A DNA stretch of 59,911 bases from Corallochytrium limacisporum Hawaii (Eukaryota; Protista; Pluriformea): positions 1 to 59,911 of the forward strand of contig PDIP01000050.1 of NCBI GenBank assembly GCA_002811645.1, given 5' to 3'. The position numbers were made by a program, and so were the translations under genes. Shown in pieces: positions 1-55,678 of this stretch; position 1 is the first letter of the stretch; every line of letters starts with the position of its first letter. The notes below the pieces were generated by a model that worked only from the letters and a program-made list of their open reading frames with translations, was not told the DNA's origin and made no database searches.

Positions 1-1268
1 GGGGGGGGTGGGGAGAGAGAGCGCAGAACAAAGCGTTTCTAAAGTACTCCGGATATGACTATTTTCTCGAACTCATATAAATAACCCGTAATGACAACAT
101 GATTTTAAATTATGTTCGCCGGATATTAAATTAAGACAGGGTAGAGGATTTTAGCTTCGGGCTTCGCTGTTATTCACTGTGCATACTGTTCTTTTCTCAG
201 TTTACAGAGGGTTCAACGTATTCTCGATCGTTGGGGTGATGTGAACAATGTCATCGTGGGTGTGAAAGTGGCGGTCTCAAAGTACTGTCGAAAAACTGAA
301 TGTTATAGTATTTGGGGCAAGGAGGGTAAGCGGAGCCGTCTGGCTTCACTACTCCAGTAGAATTTGTGTGGGGATTGTGAGTCAATCTGCAGAGATCGAA
401 AGGGCCCTGTGCGAAGGAATGGTCTTACACCCGGTTGCGAAATAAGTAGGTTGCGGTTGCAAATATTCACGACTGCCATTAGATATGTATGACAGGCCAA
501 ATCTTCGTGTTCGTGGACCTGTCCTGCAGGTGGTCCGGTCTGATTTGTTTCAACTGGACCTCACACCTGGCAAATAACCCACCAACATAGTTTGGAAGCG
601 CGCATACTTTGCATACGTGTTGTGTGCAGGGAATTCTGCAGAGGAAACATCAGTCTCCAGGCACCGGCAGGGTTGCTTGTGATTAAGCTGCTGACGTCTG
701 ACACATGAATATGACTTCCATTTGCTTCCTTCCCTGGCTTACTGCTGCTGAATATTCTATGCTTCGAAGAAAAGCTCAAGTGGGTTGGCGGCAGCAAATC
801 GCTTGTGAATATCTTGGAACCAAGACAGTTCCGCCCGTGAAACAGGATCATTCAAAGGATCGTAGCCGTTGAGTATGCTATGGGTTCGCTTTAGTGTTTA
901 CAAGGCTGTGCAGACCTAATGACGGGGATCGGGAAGGCAGAGCAGCAGAAGAAAAACAAAAAGGGAGGAATTTCATGGCTTTACAGCCGCGACATTGGCA
1001 CAAGGACGCAAAATTGGACAATACCCGACTATAGGGTAGCCAATACTGGTCTTCAGCCGAGTCATTGAGCGCGAACTTTTGCAAACATGTGTACAGCACT
1101 GCATAATACTTTACATTTGTGGACAGTTATTAGAAGGGTACCAAGTTGCTGGTCTAGTTCTTTGCCAAATTGTATTTTTTTTCATTCGAACAGGATTTGA
1201 TCTGCAGTCAAGCCAGAGTTTGAAAAGGCCACAGGCTGAGAATAAGAACACGAAATGATTTAGGGTTT

Positions 1269-3071
1269 ATGACAGTGCTTAATACAAATTCAAAGATGAA
1301 TTTCGGTGCTGCAAATAGTCCTCCGGTTGATGATGATTTTTATCTTCAAATGATCAATGAAGGTCAGAGTGGTAGTCAAGCACCGCCAGGAACGGACTTT
1401 GCCATGGACGTTGCTTCGTTCTTGAACGATGTTCTACTCCCGGCAGATATCCCTGACAATGCTTTGTATCCGAACTCCCAGTTCCACCAGAATACTGAGG
1501 GTGGTGTACATTTTGGCAGTGGAAGTGAGGGTGGCTTCGATTTTAACTCTCCGTCATTCCAACAATCTGAGTTTTCTCCGGGAAGCATGCCACAACCTGA
1601 TCAGCGACCATTTTTCCAGGACCAGCGACACTTCAATCAAATGAAACCTGAAATGATGGGGCATCCTGGGATGCACACGGGTGCTCAACAGGACGAAATT
1701 TCTGCCGAGGACAGGAAGCGTCTTAACCACGTTGCGTCGGAGCAGAAGCGCCGCGACAACATCAAGGATGGATTTAAATGTCTGGCAGACGCCCTTCCTC
1801 ACTTGAAAGAGGGAACGAGTCGCTCTGTTATGTTGAAGAAGGCTGTGGAGTACATTGACCATGTGAAGAAGCAAAACAGGGAAATTGCACAGCTGTTGTA
1901 TCAGCAACAAGGGGCTGGAGCCTCTGTGAAGGGCCCGCAACGGCAAATTGGCATTGGTTCCCCCGGCTCTGACCTAGTCGAAGGTGACGAAGTCTCATAC
2001 GCGGCGTTGATGGAAGCCATTGAAAGACGTTTAAACATTCACAACACGCAAGACCAGCGCAATATTTTCCTCATGTTCAAGGATGAGAAAGTATACGATG
2101 ACATTACGAGTCAGGAGGACTTGTATGAAAAGTTCCGCAAGGTTGCTGCGGAGGGTAAAGAAGAAATGAAGATCGGGGTCTATGTCAGAAAGGAGGGGGC
2201 ACCAAAGGACGCAATGCCAACCTTGGACCACACAGCTGTAGATGCAGAATTGCTGATGGAGAGCCATGTGCCAGAGGCAGAGTCGGAGGTTGAGGACTTC
2301 CCAGATGCTGCATTCAGCGATGTGAATGAAAAGGCATTGGAGATGCTCTTTGCCAAGTTTGAGAATGATCCGCGGAGTATGCTCGGCGGTAAGGCTTACC
2401 AGAACCCACTGTGGCGGAAGGGACGTGTCGCACGCTTCCTGAAGGTTTGCAGAAACGATGTAAAAAAGACCGCGAAGATGATGAATGCTCACTTTGATTG
2501 GCTGCAGGCGTACAACCCAGAGGCTGTGTCTATCCACGACGTGGCCAATGAAGTCAGGGACAACAAAGCATTTTTCCATGGACGAGACCGTGAAGGCCGT
2601 CCGATAATCATCTTCCGGGCCAAGAAGCATTTCGTTAAGAACCGTGACAAATATGAATCCATTCGGATGTGGGTCTACATGGTGCAACAATTCATTGACC
2701 ACTACCAGCGAGATCCAGAACAGAACGTGGTGGTCATCTACGACCGACGGGAAGCCAGCAAGCCCAACAGTGACCCTGCTGTCTTCAAGAAACTCGCCCA
2801 GATTGTGCAGTACAACTATCCGAACATCATGCATCGCATGTACGTGATCGAACCAGACTACGTTTTCCAGTACTCATTCAGTATCGTTAAACTACTGACG
2901 GCAAAAACCTTCCACAAGCGGGTGCTCCTACTCGGAAAGAACTGGATGGAGACACTAAAGAAGTTCATCGACCCCACCAACTTGCCTAAGGACATGGGTG
3001 GTCTGTCAGAGTATGAGTATCGCTATGACCCGGACGACGAGAGCCACACTTTAGGCATTGTGGATGGATAG
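1269..3071 (+). CDS. bHLH transcription factor (Ino4/Mlx/Max-like) fused to a PB1-like domain and a C-terminal CRAL-TRIO (Sec14) lipid-binding domain, 600 aa
   Basis: Single uninterrupted ORF. bHLH RKRLNHVASEQKRRDNIKDGFKCLADALP...SRSVMLKKAVEYID (~1713-1870). PB1-like SYAALMEAIERRL...IFLMFKDEKVYDDITSQEDL...MKIGVYV (~1990-2190). CRAL-TRIO_N VARFLKVCRNDVKKTAKMM and CRAL-TRIO FFHGRDREGRPIIIFRAKKH...QYNYPNIMHRMYVIEP...IDPTNLPKDMGG (~2420-3010). The start may be ATG 1269 or 1296. Confidence 0.9.
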   Translation: MTVLNTNSKMNFGAANSPPVDDDFYLQMINEGQSGSQAPPGTDFAMDVASFLNDVLLPADIPDNALYPNSQFHQNTEGGVHFGSGSEGGFDFNSPSFQQSEFSPGSMPQPDQRPFFQDQRHFNQMKPEMMGHPGMHTGAQQDEISAEDRKRLNHVASEQKRRDNIKDGFKCLADALPHLKEGTSRSVMLKKAVEYIDHVKKQNREIAQLLYQQQGAGASVKGPQRQIGIGSPGSDLVEGDEVSYAALMEAIERRLNIHNTQDQRNIFLMFKDEKVYDDITSQEDLYEKFRKVAAEGKEEMKIGVYVRKEGAPKDAMPTLDHTAVDAELLMESHVPEAESEVEDFPDAAFSDVNEKALEMLFAKFENDPRSMLGGKAYQNPLWRKGRVARFLKVCRNDVKKTAKMMNAHFDWLQAYNPEAVSIHDVANEVRDNKAFFHGRDREGRPIIIFRAKKHFVKNRDKYESIRMWVYMVQQFIDHYQRDPEQNVVVIYDRREASKPNSDPAVFKKLAQIVQYNYPNIMHRMYVIEPDYVFQYSFSIVKLLTAKTFHKRVLLLGKNWMETLKKFIDPTNLPKDMGGLSEYEYRYDPDDESHTLGIVDG

Positions 3072-3255
3072 GTGCCTGCGATTCATTCCCGAAGTCGAGT
3101 ATCAAAAAGAAGGCTATGAATATGAATACAATTCTTGTAATTTTGATCAATTTGGAAGGACTAGATGTGATGTTTAAGAACTGGTTTTCAGGCAGGCTGC
3201 GCATGAACAAGTCTGTTGAAATTAGTGGTTCAGATGGTTCGACGTCAAGAACTCT

Positions 3256-5865
3256 TCAAAGTTCCTGTTGTTGACCGTGCCCAAGAGAGCGTCGTCTGCG
3301 GAAGTCATCAATGGTTGGGAACTCTTCCAATGCCTTTCGTATAGGTTCAAGAATTTCCAGTTCATTGGTTGTTTTCCGATATTTTAGATATGCCCAGAAC
3401 TTCTCCAAACCGTAAAGCTTTCCGTTCTGGATATCCTCAAGAACCTCTGTCTGAAAGTCCGCATACATGTCTGTGCGGTGGCGTTTCTCCAGTCCGTAGC
3501 TGTAGAATCGGAAAAGACATTCAAGTCCGTACCGATAATTTGTAGCGGCATCCGACTTCGCCAGTTCCCTGAATTTCTTGTACATGGTCTGGTTAAAATT
3601 ATCTCTAAGGAAGAAGGACCAGAAACGATACAGTGTGTTCATGTGCTGAGACTTGCCTGAACCCATTGTATCTCTCTCTACGATGCATCGGTCCACGAAC
3701 TTAGAGTACGGCATTTGGATAAACCCTTGCTCACGCAAGAAACTGTTGGCTGCTTTTTCGAATGTACTGCCAAATTGGGCATCACTGTCTGCTGTAAGTG
3801 ATGACGGATTCACCTTCAGGCGTGACCAACTGCTGCGGTTGCCGCGTTTGTCTCGACTGTTGGTCTTGAACCAACCAACGTTACTTTCCACCACACTCTC
3901 TGTCCTGGACGAAGTTAATCCTCCACGATTATTGGACAAACTTTCTTTGCTGTTGTGCTTGTCACCAGTTCCAATCGAAGGAGTACCAGAAGGAACGACG
4001 TGTGTCTGCTCCCCTGCCAAATCTGCACCAGAGGATGTCCTTAGCGAGTCCTTGTCTCCGAGGGTCGTAACTTCGAAGACATCCTTCAAGGGATAGAAAC
4101 GAGCCGTTTTCTCGTTCTTGGCTCTTCGTCCATTTCTGCCACTACCACGGGTGTGGCGACGGCTCTTCCTACCGCGTCGGGCAAAGGTAGATCCATCGCT
4201 CATGGTCGATTGGCCATCCTCTGCCACTGTCGCCCCGGTCTTTTCGCTACTACCCACACTGCCAGTGCGTCGCTCTCGTGAACCTGCTCGACTATGCTCA
4301 CGTGAAGGATTTTGAGAGGTGTTCCGGGAGGTGTTACGCGAAGTGTTTTGGGACACAGCCATAGAAGATGCACTGCTTGAGTTAGTTGTAGATGATGTCC
4401 CACGGCGGAAGTCGCTGTCGTTCTCCTCGAAGCTCTTCACAAGCTGAATCTTACTCGTTGATTGCACATCACCAGATCCACTGTGAGTTTGACTAATACT
4501 CACATCCAACGAATGGTAATCATCGTCGATAAATTCCTGCTCATAGTAGTACAATCCATCGTTGATCATTTGCGCCCACTCCTTTGTCTTTTCTCTCCGC
4601 TGCATAAAGTCGCCAGTGCGGTCATATCCCATATGTTTCCGATGATCCTGGACTGGCTGAGTCACAACCACAAGATCCTCAATTTCATCATCATACATAT
4701 CGTTATTGCCCAGTTGGCTTGAGCTAGCGCTGTGACGGTGCGATGATCGCCGCTCGTCATCTGTTGAGGACAGAGATCTAATATCACATTCTGTTGTTTC
4801 ATCTTCGGCCTCATCTTCTTCGTCTTCAATGTCTCCAGGGCTCGTGTCTTCAACATGGGCCAGTCCCTCCTCATCGTAGGCATGGACCTTGCCAGGGTGC
4901 TCGAGGGTCTGTTGAACATCGGAGAGATCTTCATCTTCGTCGAAAAGGAACTGCTGCAGCTGGTTGGCCTGCCTTGGTTTTTGTTGTTGCATTTGGTGCT
5001 GATACGACTGCTCTCCCTGGTGCCGCATCTGATGCTGGTATTCTTTCCGCTGTGTACACAGTTGTCGTGTGTGCTGATCTCGGCGCAATTGTTGAGCAGA
5101 AGCGCGTACGCCAGGCAATCCCGCATTGGTGTTGGTAGAGGTGGCATAAGAATTGTGACGCTTGCGCCTTCTGATTTGTTGCCATTCACCTGCATCTTCA
5201 GCATCATCAGCTGAAGGATGCTCCTGGCCCGCATCGTCTGGAGCCCACATGTACTCCAATTCCGTGTCCTCAACCTCACTTACACAGCCCTCTAGAGTAT
5301 ACTCATCATCACTCTGTGCTGGAGTGGGACGCACAGTTGTGGCCGGTGTCGTAGTTTGACTCGCAGAATTACTATGATGACCGCTCTGCGAACTGTGCTG
5401 GGAGCCCGTTTTGCTGACAAAATGGTCCCAACCGCTCCGCTTCCGCAGACGATCTCCACGAATCTCAACTGCTTGACTGCCAGTGATTGCACGTCGCACT
5501 AAATCGGTATCTGTAGTCAGGGAGCTCAAGTCCGCGAACCGCATGACCGTTTCAAGACTGACAAAGCCTTTATCGTCCATGTGTGCTCGAAGGATTCGAT
5601 CTGTTTCCAAATTGGCAACACTGAAATAATGCTCCACTTGGTTTCGTACCGCACTGAACAGAGCTGCTTCTCCCGCTGTCCGAGGCAAGAAGACAGGATC
5701 ATTCACTACACCGGCATACCGCGTACTGCGTCTACCCTTGCGAATCAAACTCTCATGCAAGTCTGGCCAGTTTCTTTCGTCAAGGTCATTGCGTACTGAA
5801 GGTTCATGGCCGGCACTTCGCCCCAACCACGCAGAGCTGGGTCTACTCGTTCCCGAAGAGGCCAT
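3256..5865 (-). CDS. LARP1: La-related protein 1 (La motif plus C-terminal DM15 repeats)
   Basis: La motif [30 protein letters not shown]; LARP1 block DRTGDF...[11 protein letters not shown]; DM15 [21 protein letters not shown]...[18 protein letters not shown]...[13 protein letters not shown]. Confidence 0.95.
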
Positions 5866-27512: not shown

Positions 27513-28667
27513 GATTAAGAGAAGATTGAAGCGTAGACATGAGTCATTTAAAATTTCCACACAGTGACTTTGCTGAAGTGACAAAGGCCTTACGATTTGT
27601 CCGCATAAATACATGCAAAGCCTTCAGTCGTTCCATATTTGCTGGTTCGTCTGCGGAAGCCATTGCTGTGTCGAAGCATTATTGGGCCACACCTAATCCG
27701 CCGTCGGAACCGCGGTCTTCCCTTGCCACAGGCAGCTGCGCAGGCGACAGTGAGCCGGTGTCTCGTATTACTCGATGATTTCCACGACGGTTCATACATA
27801 TATTCTAATCCAACCACTACTCAGGCCAGCACCAGCCGCACTGCCTACCATTTCGCCCGCTCGTCAGCTGATCTATCCTGTTTGGGTTAACACTTGTGTT
27901 TTTTCTGCAGTTTCCAGTTCTATACCGAAGAGATCACCAAGATATTTCCAGATCTTCAAAATTTAAAGGATGGTCTGCGCAGTATTGAAAAGGCTTTTTC
28001 CCGGGGTTGTAGACCAGGTCTGGAAATTCAGACGTGCGAGGATCAGCACAACCATTAAGGGAAGACCCTGCGCACTTGTTTATTCACTGGGGACTGCCCT
28101 ATTGTTCTGCCAAGGCGCCCTGAAGCACACAGGTCGAGTTCACCGTCAGCTGAGGATTCAATGTCCACGAGCCCCAACGAAAGGCAGCACCTCTTTGATT
28201 CCACTTTGTCCACCACGCAAGGCCACATCCTGGTACGTAAGAAATACAACGATTAGATTGGATTTGACCACTTTCATTCCATTGCTAAACCCCGCTGTCG
28301 CTGAATCGCATCGGATTGTTGATTTCGACCCACCCAGCAATTGGCTGACTGTCTGAGCACTCGACCCTCCCTTGGCAACGACTGACAATTGCCATAGACA
28401 ATGTATGCGCAGTGCTGCCGAAATCTATGGCACCTCCCTCCCTTGCGCGCCTAAGACTCTTGTCTGTTTCTTACCGAGGGGGGAGGGGATCTACACAAAG
28501 GCGGAATCCTGGTTGAGTCTGTGTAAAGTCGGTCAGCTGCAACAGGGGCCATCCTTCGGTGTTCAGATGGGCGGGTCTTTCCCATCTACAATGAGCGTAG
28601 GGCCTTGATCACATGTATAGCTGAACTTTTGGGTCCCGGTGCTGCACTGGACCGATTCCATATTGAA

Positions 28668-30243
28668 ATGACTAGGCTTCAAGAGAGTCACGACCGCGAG
28701 GTCTCAGATGGAGCCGGTGAGCACCAGCTCGAGCTAACTGCCTTGTTGACAAAGCTCGAAACGGCACGCAAGGAACCTGAGACTCGGGACTTGGAGTTTC
28801 CGCGGCAGCTGAAGACGCTAGAAGACGGAAAACATGTGGCAGAGGTGTTGGCTTTGCGCAGAACGGAGAACGAGGAAGTGACTGCCCATCCCGAAGCTAT
28901 TCTGGCTCGAAGGAGACAGGAGTGTGATTATCTGACTGAAGAAATCCAACAGCTTAAGAGCGCTATGGAAGTGGCTCAAGAGCACATGGCAGCTGCGGAT
29001 CAGGCCGTCAAAGATTCACATGAGATGATGAGACTGATTGAAGGCCAGGTTAAGGCCAAGAACCGAGAGATCAATGTGCTGAAGACGCATTTGGGAGAGC
29101 TTGGAGACACACTCTCCGGCAATGAAGACAAGGAAAAGCAATTTGAGCACAAGCTGGCTATGCTGGCAAAATGTGCCTCAGAACGAGAGGCTGATCTGCG
29201 GGACAAGATTGAACTATATCAAAAGCAGCTAGAGCAGATCGACCAGGAGCATGAAACAGTCATTACGAAGGTCCGGGGCAAGCACACAGCCGATACTGCA
29301 ATCCTGATAAGCGAGCACAGTGCCCAGCTGGATGAGGTGAAGCTTGTCTTAGACCGCGCCATGGAAGTTGCCGTGGGGGAAAAGGAAGAGGAATTGCTGA
29401 CGGAGATGAAACACTCGCTACGCCGGAAGGACAGTGAGCTCAAGACCATGAAAGCTCAGTATGAAGATAGGCAAAGAATTGTCGAGAACAAGAACAGCCA
29501 GATAAGTGAGACTCAAATTGAGCGGTACTCGACCCTTAAACAGGTGAAGGATCTGAACAAAAAAAGTTGCCAAGTACCGCTCAGACATTGATTGCCTCCA
29601 GTGTAAAGATGATGACATTACCATAGCGTTCAATCTAGTCACTAAGATGCTGAAATTGGCGAACATGACCATTATGGACAGGGACAAGGAAAGACAGGAC
29701 GTGCAGGCTGACCACAAGAAGGTGATCACGCAGGCTCGAGACATCATGGAATTGCAGGCTGACCTACAGCGTCTGAAGGACAAGGAGACAGCAGCTAGTA
29801 CAGAAATGGAACAAATTTTCAGTGAGAAGTCACAGATGATAATAGCACTTCAAGAGAAACAGATCTTGCACCACCAGGACCAGATGCTCCACGATTTCCG
29901 TCAGGTGCAATTCAAGAAGAAGGCGCGTCTACAGGAAGTTACCTCTCGCTTAGTAGAAGTCACGGACAAGTACAACCGTCAAGAATCGAGACCTAACGAC
30001 ATTCAACGCATCGACGATCTCACCCACGCACTTGAAGGGCTACGTGCCCGTCTCATGAAGTCCGAAGAGCTATGGGGGATGTACGAGCAGAAATTGCAGA
30101 CCCAAGAACAGAGCCTGAACCTCATTTTCAAGAGCAAGTCAGTGTTTTCTTTTCCAGAGCCTTTGCTGGGTGGGAACAGTAGCGTGAAACGTGGGCCACG
30201 CGCATCCAGCCGGACGCTCGGTTTGCCACCATTGCAAACTTGA
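28668..30243 (+). pseudogene. FAM184: FAM184-like coiled-coil protein split by a +1 frameshift at an A7 run (pseudogene or assembly indel)
   Basis: Removing one A from 29559-29565 joins ORFs 28605-29591 and 29647-30243 without stops (...DLNKK-VAKYRSDIDCLQCKDDDITIAFNLVTKMLK...). C-terminus YNRQESRPNDIQRI...YEQKLQTQEQSLNLIF resembles the FAM184 R-ESR-ED...YxLELxNRExNFNKVF block. The FAM184 N-terminal domain was not found. Confidence 0.65.
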
Positions 30244-54253: not shown

Positions 54254-55678
54254 ATGGATGACCGCATTTACATTGTACTGTACCCAAACAGCAACATCGA
54301 GCCACAGAGTGGCAAACCCTTCGTTGTGTCTCCTTCCGCGAACTGGGCAGAGACCAAATCCGCTTGCTACAACCGCCTCTATGGGGTTCCGAACGCAGGA
54401 GCGGCCCTTTTTGACGTCATGGGGAAACCTGTCCTCACTGCCTACGACCTTGTACAAGGCCAGCCGATTGTAGTCACAGACGGGCAGAGCGCCGGAGCTA
54501 ATGTCCAGGAGGACTTTGACAGCGAGCTCATGAACGTGCTGGGCGGCCAATCGTTCCAGAGTGAGGTCACAAACTCTGTCGGCAACGTTGGTGATCTACT
54601 GCAAGAGGGTCTTGGTGGTGTCTACGGTAAGGTTGATCCAGAGGGCACCCACAACTTGGCCCATCTTCAAGTCTGGCTCGGTGATGTGGACAACCAGATC
54701 GGAGACGTGGGCAATGGCTTTGACAATGGCAACGGTGCCGCTGCAGCAGCTGCACTGGCCGACGCCAACAACCCGGCCAAGCGTAGGGCTCTGGGTAAGC
54801 CGGACATTCCCTCAATTGACCTCAACGGTGTAATTCAGCAGGCTAAGGGCTTTGGAAACACTGCCAGCAGCCAGAACAGTGCTCGCAGCGACACGGGTGC
54901 TGCCCCGGGACAGAAACCAAAGCGCAAGACCGTGCGCCTGAGCTCACACAAGCAAGCTGAACAGCGCAGCCGCGACAAGCTTCGCAACAGCATGAAGACA
55001 CTCATGCTCGAAATTCCGAGTCTGGGCAAAGAGGAAAAGATGCCCAGCAAGGCTGCTATCCTGGAGATGGCTGCAGAGTACATTCGCAAGAAGAACATTG
55101 AGACCCGGGAGCTTGTTGAACAGCTGCGGAAGACCGCCGCCGAAGCCGAAGAAAAGAAGAATCGCGTGAACGCGATCAACCAAGACCTGAAGGCCAGCTC
55201 TTTCACCACCCTGGAGATTACTGATCAGAACGGCATGTATACCTACGTGAACGAGAACTGGTGCCGAATCTTTGGCTTCGTGCGGGAGGAGGTCATTGGC
55301 AAGCTCTACCGTGAGAACACGGACTGCAGCAGTTGCAAGATCATGGACGCTAAGCAACAGCAGATTGATGCGCAACTGAAACGTGGCGAGGACTGGCGTG
55401 GCATGGTGCTTAGCCGAAGCAAGGACGGTGTGGCGCTTAGTTCTTTCTGCGTGATAAACCCCGTGCTCGGACCAAACGGCGAGGTATTCCAGTACGTTTG
55501 CGTTCGAAGCCGCTTCCAGGCGATCGATGAGGACGACGTCACCGAGAAGTGTTCCGTCAAGTACGGCTTGAGCGAAGACGATGCCGTGGACAACTCTGCA
55601 TTGCTGGCCTACATGATCAAGGCGAACATTCGCCGCCAGAGCCAGTCAACTGCAGCGGTCGACGGAACGGCAGCTTAA
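54254..55678 (+). CDS. bHLH-ZIP transcription factor with an N-terminal DCX/KHA-like beta-grasp domain and a single C-terminal PAS/PAC domain, 474 aa
   Basis: N-terminus IYIVLYPNSN...GKPFVV...LFDVMGKPVLTAYDLVQGQPIVVTDGQ. bHLH SHKQAEQRSRDKLRNSMKTLMLEIP...PSKAAILEMAAEYIR plus coiled coil (~54930-55190). PAS LEITDQNGMYTYVNENWCRIFGFVREEVIGK...GEDWRG..RSKDG...INPVLGPNGEVFQYVCVR (~55200-55515). Confidence 0.9.
   Translation: MDDRIYIVLYPNSNIEPQSGKPFVVSPSANWAETKSACYNRLYGVPNAGAALFDVMGKPVLTAYDLVQGQPIVVTDGQSAGANVQEDFDSELMNVLGGQSFQSEVTNSVGNVGDLLQEGLGGVYGKVDPEGTHNLAHLQVWLGDVDNQIGDVGNGFDNGNGAAAAAALADANNPAKRRALGKPDIPSIDLNGVIQQAKGFGNTASSQNSARSDTGAAPGQKPKRKTVRLSSHKQAEQRSRDKLRNSMKTLMLEIPSLGKEEKMPSKAAILEMAAEYIRKKNIETRELVEQLRKTAAEAEEKKNRVNAINQDLKASSFTTLEITDQNGMYTYVNENWCRIFGFVREEVIGKLYRENTDCSSCKIMDAKQQQIDAQLKRGEDWRGMVLSRSKDGVALSSFCVINPVLGPNGEVFQYVCVRSRFQAIDEDDVTEKCSVKYGLSEDDAVDNSALLAYMIKANIRRQSQSTAAVDGTAA

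What the first reader, a model, noticed from the sequence alone, without database searches (positions are those of the whole stretch)
1269..3071. bHLH-PB1-Sec14 fusion: candidate one-component lipid-sensing transcription factor
Seen: one stop-free ORF joins an acidic/Gln-rich N-terminus, a bHLH with the H-E-R E-box residues (NHVASEQKRR), a PB1-like segment with an acidic OPCA-like motif (FKDEKVYDDITSQEDL), and a complete CRAL-TRIO_N plus CRAL-TRIO domain. Established: CRAL-TRIO domains bind phospholipids and other hydrophobic ligands; NHxxSEQKRR is typical of Ino4/Mlx-type bHLHs; yeast Ino2/Ino4 control phospholipid genes through a separate sensor, Opi1. Inference: sensor and DNA-binding domain are fused into a nuclear-receptor-like lipid regulator. 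I do not know this architecture from model organisms.
Basis: partly seen in the sequence, partly recalled or inferred. Interest (0 to 1): 0.85.

Follow-up and report, generated by a model that had tools for sequence, protein, structure and literature searches.

The report
Lipid-pocket transcription factor of animal relatives
Single-celled relatives of animals share an apparently undescribed gene that joins a DNA-binding domain to a remodelled lipid-binding pocket, so it may switch genes on or off in response to a lipid, as hormone receptors do in animals.

Summary
The fusion is real. It is one intronless ORF (1269-3071, probable start 1296) covered by one gap-free, probably RNA, contig. It has Pfam HLH and CRAL_TRIO domains and a confident model (pLDDT 85). 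The genome is Corallochytrium limacisporum.

The architecture is an old family: whole genes occur in Capsaspora, Pigoraptor, Chromosphaera, Ichthyophonus, Amoebidium and a Corallochytrium paralogue (noted earlier, s1-559830). None appeared from animals, choanoflagellates or fungi among the top 150 hits.

Corrections and additions:
1. The PB1 is a half domain (no beta1/beta2, no basic Lys, degenerate OPCA).
2. The bHLH is its own group-B clade, not Max, Mlx or Ino4.
3. The Sec14 PtdIns barcode, kept in stand-alone relatives, is lost family-wide (R65 to C, T236 to F), and bulky aromatics probably line the pocket. So it is probably not a PtdIns transfer protein.
4. A short acidic amphipathic N-terminal motif is conserved.
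5. The INO1 promoter carries three yeast ICRE cores (p~0.001); the binder is unknown.

Best reading (0.5): a dimeric E-box activator gated by a non-PtdIns hydrophobic ligand. Ligand, targets and gating are untested. I found no paper describing it, but could not read the 2011 Capsaspora transcription-factor survey.

The parts
1269..3071 (+). Whole intronless ORF, 600 aa (591 aa from the likely start at 1296)
   Evidence: contig X1/1 covers 1193-3018 without gap
1407..1448 (+). Conserved acidic amphipathic motif, aa 47-60 (DVASFLNDVLLPAD); candidate activation or cofactor-binding helix
   Evidence: 3-way match with Pigoraptor and Capsaspora p=0.001; out-of-sample match in the upstream exon of L064 p=0.002; absent from Ichthyophonus, Amoebidium and the paralogue
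1716..1865 (+). Group-B bHLH, aa 150-199; basic motif NHVASEQKRR at 1725-1754 with H154/E158/R162 and S157 (position of Ino4 S53)
   Evidence: Pfam HLH 35.2 bits; Max best PDB match; Ino4 residues from PMC9315497 and PMC11739200
1866..1913 (+). Short helix-2 extension (about two heptads), no full leucine zipper
   Evidence: helix to model residue 76; alignment A5
1986..2195 (+). Half-PB1 domain, aa 240-309 (alpha1-beta3-beta4-alpha2-beta5; beta1/beta2 and the basic Lys missing; OPCA degenerate)
   Evidence: DSSP; VIA-align to 4mjs_A 32-100, 2o2v_B 61-123, 2g4s_A 21-85, 1oey_J; Pfam PB1 profile positions 19/20-81 only; hhalign to complete PB1s, columns 20-77
2196..2318 (+). Disordered acidic linker (D+E 21-33% in all seven full members; length 42-103 aa)
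   Evidence: pLDDT <50
2319..2558 (+). N-terminal helical lobe of the Sec14 fold (CRAL_TRIO_N equivalent), with family-specific W382, R386, C394 (= Sec14 R65) and H408
   Evidence: structure alignments; column counts
2559..3068 (+). CRAL-TRIO pocket domain and tail; PtdIns barcode T236 replaced by F548, PtdCho barcode S173/T175 replaced by V487/V489; W468 and F475 where relatives most often have Gly/Ala
   Evidence: Pfam 101.5 bits; mapping on 1aua; counts; barcode definition PMC4945147

Best explanation
A holozoan family of one-component, ligand-gated transcription factors. Shown: a group-B bHLH with intact E-box residues, a half-PB1 domain and a complete Sec14 fold sit in one expressed protein. 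They were inherited together (each domain forms one clade) in Filasterea, Ichthyosporea and Pluriformea. Inferred mechanism: (1) the protein dimerises through the bHLH, with itself or with its paralogue. With only a short zipper, the half-PB1 completes its sheet against the partner's half-PB1 or packs on the CRAL-TRIO lobe, and so couples the pocket to the DNA-binding end. (2) The CRAL-TRIO domain no longer exchanges PtdIns. It holds a smaller or differently shaped hydrophobic ligand in an aromatic-lined pocket, and closure of the helical gate changes dimer state, DNA binding or nuclear entry, as START does for HD-ZIPIII. (3) The N-terminal acidic amphipathic helix recruits coactivators at T-flanked E-boxes. 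Lipid-synthesis genes, INO1 first, are the most likely targets.
For: Full-length homologues at 30-41% identity in six species. bHLH clade 86/89. CRAL-TRIO clade 94, grouping Capsaspora with Pigoraptor and Ichthyophonus with Amoebidium. The model has pLDDT 85 and aligns best to ligand-bound Sec14-family structures (Z 21-23), less well to 1aua (rmsd 3.9). PtdIns barcode R/T/K occurs in 42/56, 49/53 and 55/56 stand-alone relatives, against C 9/9, F 9/10 and K/R 8/10 in the family. About a dozen family-only invariant residues, several polar (R386, H408, N432, K461, H522, Y535), point to a new, selected function. pTM 0.69 exceeds the 0.46-0.54 expected if only CRAL-TRIO were placed, hinting at a predicted interdomain contact (arithmetic; indirect). 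The N-terminal motif is conserved. The INO1 promoter (L065) has 3 TTCAYRTG cores in 555 bp: 18/20000 shuffles reach that number, and 0 of 74 other promoters have two. S157 sits where Ino4 S53 reads the flanking T bases (PMC11739200). Precedent: START in HD-ZIPIII (PMC10226595).
Against: No ligand, localisation or target has been measured. W468, F475, Y535 and F548 replace small residues and could fill the pocket; its volume could not be computed because model coordinates are not exposed. The genome has at least 26 bHLH loci, including SREBP-like, Mlx/Mondo-like and another HIASEQKRR protein (L046), any of which could bind the INO1 sites. Other phospholipid promoters tested (PSS-like, PIS-like, CPT/EPT-like, cytidylyltransferases, two PEMT-family) show no ICRE core. 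The N-terminal motif is missing from three members. No nuclear-receptor-like coactivator helix was identified.
Confidence: 0.5

Rival explanations
1. Membrane-sequestered transcription factor. The CRAL-TRIO domain binds a membrane surface or membrane protein (no exchangeable pocket ligand) and keeps the factor out of the nucleus until lipid composition changes. This is the Opi1/Scs2, SREBP or Mondo logic in one chain.
For: Basic gate region conserved (R549 in 9/10, K/R550-551); conserved acidic linker; family-specific residues cluster in the N-terminal lobe (W382, R386, H408); no Opi1 hit in this genome (control uninformative).
Against: No transmembrane segment. No conserved FFAT core: the EDFPDAAF look-alike occurs only in this protein. 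The phosphoinositide-contacting Arg (Sec14 R65) is lost.
Confidence: 0.2
2. Ligand-independent scaffold. The pocket has been filled by bulky aromatics, and the CRAL-TRIO domain works as a protein-interaction or dimer platform, like an orphan receptor or a BCH-type Sec14 fold. The protein is an ordinary E-box factor with an unusual tail.
For: Small-to-aromatic changes at W468 and F475 (same helix face as Sec14 Y151, inferred from register) and at F548; loss of both barcodes and of Sec14 R208; the same CRAL-TRIO subfamily also occurs behind a PHD-like finger in Pigoraptor (P0033).
Against: The whole fold, including gate, hinge GG and N-lobe, is kept over deep time. Alpha-TTP- and CRALBP-type ligand binders also use aromatic pockets (own knowledge). 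The invariant polar residues suit a ligand head group.
Confidence: 0.2
3. Sensor of a non-lipid cofactor (heme-like, as Sfh5) or of redox state through the invariant Cys394.
For: Sfh5 shows that the fold can bind heme (PMC7462610). C394 is invariant (9/9), H408 occurs in 8/9 and H522 in 8/10 family members.
Against: The positions matching Sec14 S173/T175 are hydrophobic here (V487/V489), whereas Sfh5 binds heme through His173 and Tyr175; the equivalence of these positions is inferred. Sfh5 is a weaker match (Z 19.5).
Confidence: 0.07
4. Artefact: two genes or an assembly chimera read as one ORF.
For: None beyond the oddity of the architecture.
Against: Gap-free contig across both domains; the same architecture in a paralogue and five other species, two of them from transcriptomes.
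Confidence: 0.01

Closest known systems
Plant HD-ZIPIII/IV (homeodomain-zipper + START)
   Same: DNA-binding dimer module fused to a lipid-transfer fold. In HD-ZIPIII, START binds phospholipids, promotes dimerisation and is needed for DNA binding (PMC10226595).
   Different: Unrelated DNA-binding and pocket folds; plant lineage; ligand binding shown there, not here.
Yeast Ino2/Ino4 with Opi1
   Same: Group-B bHLH; basic region matches Ino4 N-H-V-x-S-E-x-x-R-R; ICRE cores in the INO1 promoter of this genome; N-terminal acidic motif is reminiscent of Ino2 TAD2/RID (from memory, not tested).
   Different: The sensor is a separate PA-binding repressor in yeast (PMC6962311). Pfam bHLH_INO4 and bHLH_INO2 scores are below cut-off for this protein. 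Orthology is not shown.
Max / Mlx / Mondo bHLH-ZIP network
   Same: Max is the best structural-database match of the family bHLH profile (69.9 bits against 36.2 for Ino4).
   Different: No full zipper and no DCD-like tail. The genome has separate Max-like (L050, L054) and Mlx/Mondo-like (L044, L045, L047) genes, and the family is its own clade.
Sec14/Sfh PITPs and multidomain Sec14 proteins (SEC14L2/SPF, alpha-TTP, CRALBP, NF1, Kalirin)
   Same: Complete Sec14 fold, Z 19-23 to the stand-alone and SPF-type proteins, 13-15 to NF1 and Kalirin.
   Different: PtdIns and PtdCho barcodes lost; fused to a DNA-binding domain, which I did not find reported.
Animal nuclear receptors and bHLH-PAS sensors
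   Same: One-component logic of DNA-binding domain plus hydrophobic pocket.
   Different: No homology; no Hormone_recep hit in this genome (control uninformative).
PB1 domains (aPKC, MEKK2/3, NBR1, p40phox; TFG-like and PB1-SAM in this genome)
   Same: alpha1-beta3-beta4-alpha2-beta5 superposes at 1.7-3.0 A.
   Different: beta1/beta2 and the basic Lys are absent, and the D-x-E-G-D cluster seen in the genome's complete PB1s is reduced to KDE/REE/KSD with the last Asp lost.

Membership tests
bHLH group B (E-box CACGTG binders) | HLH domain above Pfam cut-off | tested here: met
   35.2 bits vs 20.7; 7/7 full members
bHLH group B (E-box CACGTG binders) | His5-Glu9-Arg13 in the basic region | tested here: met
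   H154/E158/R162; kept in 6 of 7 members, His replaced by Thr in the paralogue
bHLH group B (E-box CACGTG binders) | Measured E-box binding | not testable with these tools
   needs EMSA or DAP-seq
Max | Short bHLH-ZIP with a full leucine zipper, orthologous to Max | tested here: not met
   only about two heptads after helix 2; separate Max-like genes L050/L054; separate clade
Mlx/Mondo | bHLH-ZIP followed by the DCD helical domain | tested here: not met
   a half-PB1 follows instead; DCD-like tails are seen on L044, L045 and L047 (DCD recognised from memory)
Ino2/Ino4 | Pfam bHLH_INO4 or bHLH_INO2 above cut-off | tested here: not met
   26.0 < 27.5 and 19.7 < 23.4 for the excised domain; only Amoebidium P0008 passes bHLH_INO2 (25.5)
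Ino2/Ino4 | Orthology in a tree with fungal Ino2/Ino4; Opi1-binding RID | tested here: inconclusive
   yeast sequences not available by reference; two mucoralean bHLHs are unresolved relative to the family; N-terminal motif vs Rhizopus p=0.08
CRAL-TRIO/Sec14 superfamily | CRAL_TRIO domain and Sec14 fold with N-terminal lobe | tested here: met
   Pfam 101.5 bits; Z 22 over 230-242 residues
Sec14-like PtdIns transfer proteins | PtdIns barcode R65, T236, K66, K239 | tested here: not met
   C394, F548, R395, R551; family C 9/9 and F 9/10
Sec14-like PtdIns/PtdCho exchangers | PtdCho barcode Y151, S173, T175 | tested here: not met
   V472, V487, V489; also mostly absent from the stand-alone relatives
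PB1 domain | Ubiquitin-like beta-grasp fold with five strands and two helices | tested here: not met
   three strands and two helices only; matches start at PB1 alpha1
PB1 domain | Homology to PF00564 | tested here: met
   4/8 members hit, best E 2.8e-9; Capsaspora 26.8 bits > 23.6
PB1 type I (OPCA) | D-x-(D/E)-G-D ... (D/E)-x-D acidic clusters | tested here: not met
   second cluster (SQEDL) kept; the G-D Asp of the first cluster is absent in all 8
One-component ligand-gated transcription factors (functional class) | Ligand binding changes transcriptional output | not testable with these tools
   needs lipidomics, pocket mutants and reporters

The most novel reading that the evidence does not exclude
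An ancestral holozoan lipid receptor: one chain does the jobs that yeast splits between Ino2/Ino4 and Opi1. It senses a specific lipid in a re-purposed Sec14 pocket, signals through an obligately paired half-PB1, and controls INO1 through ICRE-like boxes. It existed before nuclear receptors and was lost in the choanoflagellate-animal line.
Probability: 0.25. Interest if true: 0.9.

Novelty: new variant of a known kind. Interest (0 to 1): 0.72.

Why it matters
How animals' single-celled ancestors sensed lipids before nuclear receptors is an open question. This family offers a concrete, soluble candidate, present in two species that (from my own knowledge) can be transfected, Capsaspora (CAOG_06016) and Corallochytrium. 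It makes sharp predictions: no PtdIns exchange, a distinct ligand, T-flanked E-boxes, and the INO1 promoter as first test. If confirmed, it would be an independent invention of the 'DNA-binding domain plus lipid-transfer fold' design beside plant HD-ZIP-START, and, to my knowledge, the first use of a Sec14 domain inside a sequence-specific transcription factor. It would also be a natural example of a half-PB1 fold. Even if the pocket is dead, it is an undescribed transcription-factor family of the holozoan ancestor.

Tried and rejected
Uninformative searches and models: the single-sequence AlphaFold model was useless (pLDDT 39). The word-indexed homologue search missed even known family members, so its blanks mean nothing. 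The ESM Atlas feature searches gave no hit for the middle domain or for bHLH plus middle domain, and the Atlas shape search gave only CRAL-TRIO clusters without HLH. The JGI metagenome scan found no member. The middle-domain profile found no significant PDB sequence.

Ideas considered and dropped: (a) orthology to Max or Mlx. (b) A conserved FFAT motif in the acidic linker, seen in this protein only. (c) The DDDFY match to Zychaea P0002: p=0.08 and selected by the word search itself. (d) Homology of the N-terminal motif to fungal Ino2 RID: p=0.08 with Rhizopus, and the yeast sequence is only remembered. (e) beta1/beta2 supplied by the C-terminal tail: no such strands in the monomer model. (f) General E-box enrichment in phospholipid promoters: only INO1 stands out; CACRTG is under-represented in the window (39 vs 75 expected).

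Literature: no paper with bHLH + CRAL-TRIO/Sec14 + Capsaspora/holozoa, or with CAOG_06016; no mention in PMC5560861, PMC3753549, PMC4877666 or the supplements checked (some files are cut). Sebe-Pedros 2011 (PMC4342549) and de Mendoza 2013 (PMC3864300) are not held and might show this architecture.

The exons and frameshifted pieces in L064 and L031 were read separately and not joined.
Full report
Observation. Window 1269-3071 (+) is a stop-free ORF of 600 codons. The EukProt protein P0001 is the same sequence from the second ATG at 1296. Pfam finds HLH at aa 150-199 (35.2 bits, cut-off 20.7) and CRAL_TRIO at aa 431-578 (101.5 bits), but neither PB1 nor CRAL_TRIO_N in this protein. One assembled contig from a probable RNA run lies on 1193-3018 with no mismatch, gap or joint, and nothing lies on 300-1190. 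A second run covers 1455-3700 and runs on into the convergent LARP1 gene. The tool only guesses that the runs are RNA, and a contig is not a molecule, but the pattern is that of an unspliced mRNA holding both domains.

Organism. The assembly is 24.1 Mb in 286 contigs. The paralogue found on contig C172 is EukProt 'Clim_evm14s143', and Corallochytrium limacisporum is 24.1 Mb (PMC5560861).

Family. phmmer over 1.84 billion representatives gave eight hits better than 1e-30: this protein, Pigoraptor chileana P0003, Capsaspora CAOG_06016 P0004, a metagenomic Chromosphaera-like protein P0005 (90% cluster with Chromosphaera Nk52_evm81s223, P0153), Ichthyophonus P0006, the paralogue P0007, Amoebidium P0008 and a C-terminal fragment from Syssomonas P0009. 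All full-length ones carry HLH and CRAL_TRIO. A second Amoebidium fragment (P0012) belongs too. So does a member on a 71%-GC eukaryotic contig of ERZ2606016, where a bHLH piece lies just upstream in another frame. The seven bHLH domains form one clade (86/89), apart from this genome's Max-like, Mlx/Mondo-like and bHLH-PAS genes. The CRAL-TRIO domains form one clade (94; 98 with a Pigoraptor protein that has a PHD-like finger instead), with Capsaspora next to Pigoraptor and Ichthyophonus next to Amoebidium. This fits one fusion before Filasterea, Ichthyosporea and Pluriformea split. Family-type CRAL-TRIO domains scored 80 bits or more, the list was cut at 62 bits, and no further listed protein had both domains.

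Structure. With a 77-row alignment the model of aa 140-600 reached pLDDT 85 and pTM 0.69. It shows a bHLH with a helix-2 extension of about two heptads, a helix-strand-strand-helix-strand domain at aa 240-309, a disordered acidic linker, and a complete Sec14 fold (Z 22 to Sfh2, SPF and Sec14-PtdCho). The middle domain superposes on PB1 domains (4mjs_A Z 8.1, rmsd 1.7 A, chain residues 32-100; also 2o2v_B, 2g4s_A, 1oey_J), and four of eight members hit Pfam PB1 (best E 2.8e-9). Every match starts at PB1 helix alpha1, and in Capsaspora only 13 residues separate the end of bHLH helix 2 from that helix. So strands beta1/beta2 with the basic lysine are truly absent. The first OPCA cluster lacks its G-D aspartate in all members, unlike the genome's two complete PB1 proteins. 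Canonical front-to-back PB1 binding is therefore doubtful. A three-stranded half domain needs a partner surface. The pTM is higher than CRAL-TRIO alone would give (0.46-0.54), which hints, indirectly, that about 70 more residues are docked.

The pocket. Mapped on Sec14 through the 1aua alignment, the PtdIns barcode (R65, T236, K66, K239; PMC4945147; called the cardinal signature of the superfamily in PMC7462610) is kept in the 56 nearest stand-alone relatives (R 42/56, T 49/53, K 55/56). In the family it is replaced by Cys (9/9), Phe (9/10) and Lys/Arg (8/10). The PtdCho barcode positions are hydrophobic, and R208 is lost. The family has instead gained near-invariant W382, R386, C394, H408, N432, K461, W468, F475, H522, Y535 and F548. 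W468 and F475 lie, by helical register, on the face of Sec14 Y151, where relatives most often have Gly or Ala. The domain has thus been re-purposed together with the fusion: probably not a PtdIns transfer protein, and either a pocket for a smaller ligand or a filled one. I could not measure the cavity.

DNA side. H154, E158 and R162 are intact. The family profile matches Max best (69.9 bits; Myc 50.7, USF2 45.9, Ino4 36.2), but the basic region agrees with Ino4 at N, H, V, S, E, R, R (PMC9315497). S157 occupies the position of Ino4 S53, which reads the flanking T bases of the ICRE and is Leu in Max (PMC11739200); six of seven members have Ser. The N-terminus carries a 14-residue acidic amphipathic motif shared with Pigoraptor and Capsaspora (p=0.001) and recovered out of sample in an upstream exon of the Chromosphaera-like contig L064 (p=0.002). 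It is missing from Ichthyophonus, Amoebidium and the paralogue. It looks like an activation helix; its likeness to Ino2 TAD2/RID is from memory only.

Targets. I took the yeast ICRE core TTCAYRTG and scanned ten candidate lipid-gene promoters and two PEMT-family promoters. The INO1 promoter (L065; Pfam PF01658) has three cores within 250 bp of the ATG, one a perfect WYTTCAYRTG. 18 of 20000 dinucleotide shuffles reach three, and none of 74 other upstream segments has two. Allowing for four patterns and ten promoters, the worst-case p is about 0.04. This suggests that INO1 is under bHLH control here as in yeast, but it does not name the binder: the genome has at least 26 bHLH loci, including an SREBP-like gene and another HIASEQKRR protein. 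The other lipid promoters had no core.

Mechanism. Most likely (0.5) is a dimeric E-box activator whose dimer state, DNA binding or nuclear entry is gated by a non-PtdIns hydrophobic ligand in the Sec14 pocket, with the half-PB1 as coupling and dimer module. The architecture, inheritance, fold and barcode loss are shown; ligand, gating and targets are inferred. Rivals are membrane sequestration without a pocket ligand (0.2), a filled pocket serving as scaffold (0.2), a heme or redox sensor (0.07) and artefact (0.01).

Novelty. The logic has precedents: START in HD-ZIPIII binds phospholipids and licenses DNA binding (PMC10226595), and nuclear receptors and bHLH-PAS proteins work alike. The combination of bHLH, half-PB1 and CRAL-TRIO was not found in any searchable paper. 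Databases call the Capsaspora protein only 'BHLH domain-containing protein'. The 2011 survey of Capsaspora transcription factors could not be read and may show it. I rate it a new variant of a known kind, interest 0.72.

Limits. The homologue search by words was insensitive. Exons and frameshifted pieces of L064 and L031 were examined apart and not joined.

Noticed in passing
L065:310-494 (G000:C182, upstream of INO1): Three yeast-type ICRE cores (TTCAYRTG) plus a TCACATG within 250 bp of the INO1 start; p about 0.001 by shuffling and unique among 75 promoters. Suggests Ino2/Ino4-like control of INO1 in a holozoan, whichever bHLH binds it.
   Followed up: partly
window 702-709: One ICRE-like core (CACATGAA) 567 bp upstream of this gene's first ATG; could be autoregulation but is within chance.
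   Followed up: partly
window 54254-55678 (+): HLH plus PAS_9 above cut-off, with an unassigned N-terminal domain. It belongs to a six-gene clade in this genome (L052, L058, L059, L060, L062, L063; support 98/97): a second set of candidate one-component sensors.
   Followed up: partly
P0033 (Pigoraptor chileana EukProt): The same CRAL-TRIO subfamily behind a PHD-like finger (Pfam PHD E 0.012, below cut-off) and a coiled coil; a second possible nuclear use of this pocket. Prey contamination not excluded.
   Followed up: partly
L031:7890-9425 (ENA ERZ2606016): Frameshifted family member in an unidentified 71%-GC eukaryote; might extend the family's range.
   Followed up: partly
L022:1471-3186 (-), G000:C172: Paralogue Clim_evm14s143 has Thr for the basic-region His and lacks the N-terminal motif; possible heterodimer partner or modulator.
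   Followed up: partly
L002 (G000:C234:72900-73064): bHLH with Tyr in the basic region (EKRYR) in a 1623-codon frame: SREBP-like (signature from memory).
   Followed up: no
window 3256-5865 (-): LARP1 with La and DM15/HEAT domains converges on the finding; a transcript contig joins both 3' ends.
   Followed up: no
L066/L067 (G000:C251:21084-21575 + and 28316-28807 -): Two equal-scoring inverted copies of a CDP-alcohol phosphatidyltransferase gene 7 kb apart; recent duplication or assembly artefact.
   Followed up: no
L039/L069 (G000:C132:81944-83860): A CRAL-TRIO match with one internal stop or intron lies just upstream of a PIS-like CDP-alcohol phosphatidyltransferase gene.
   Followed up: no
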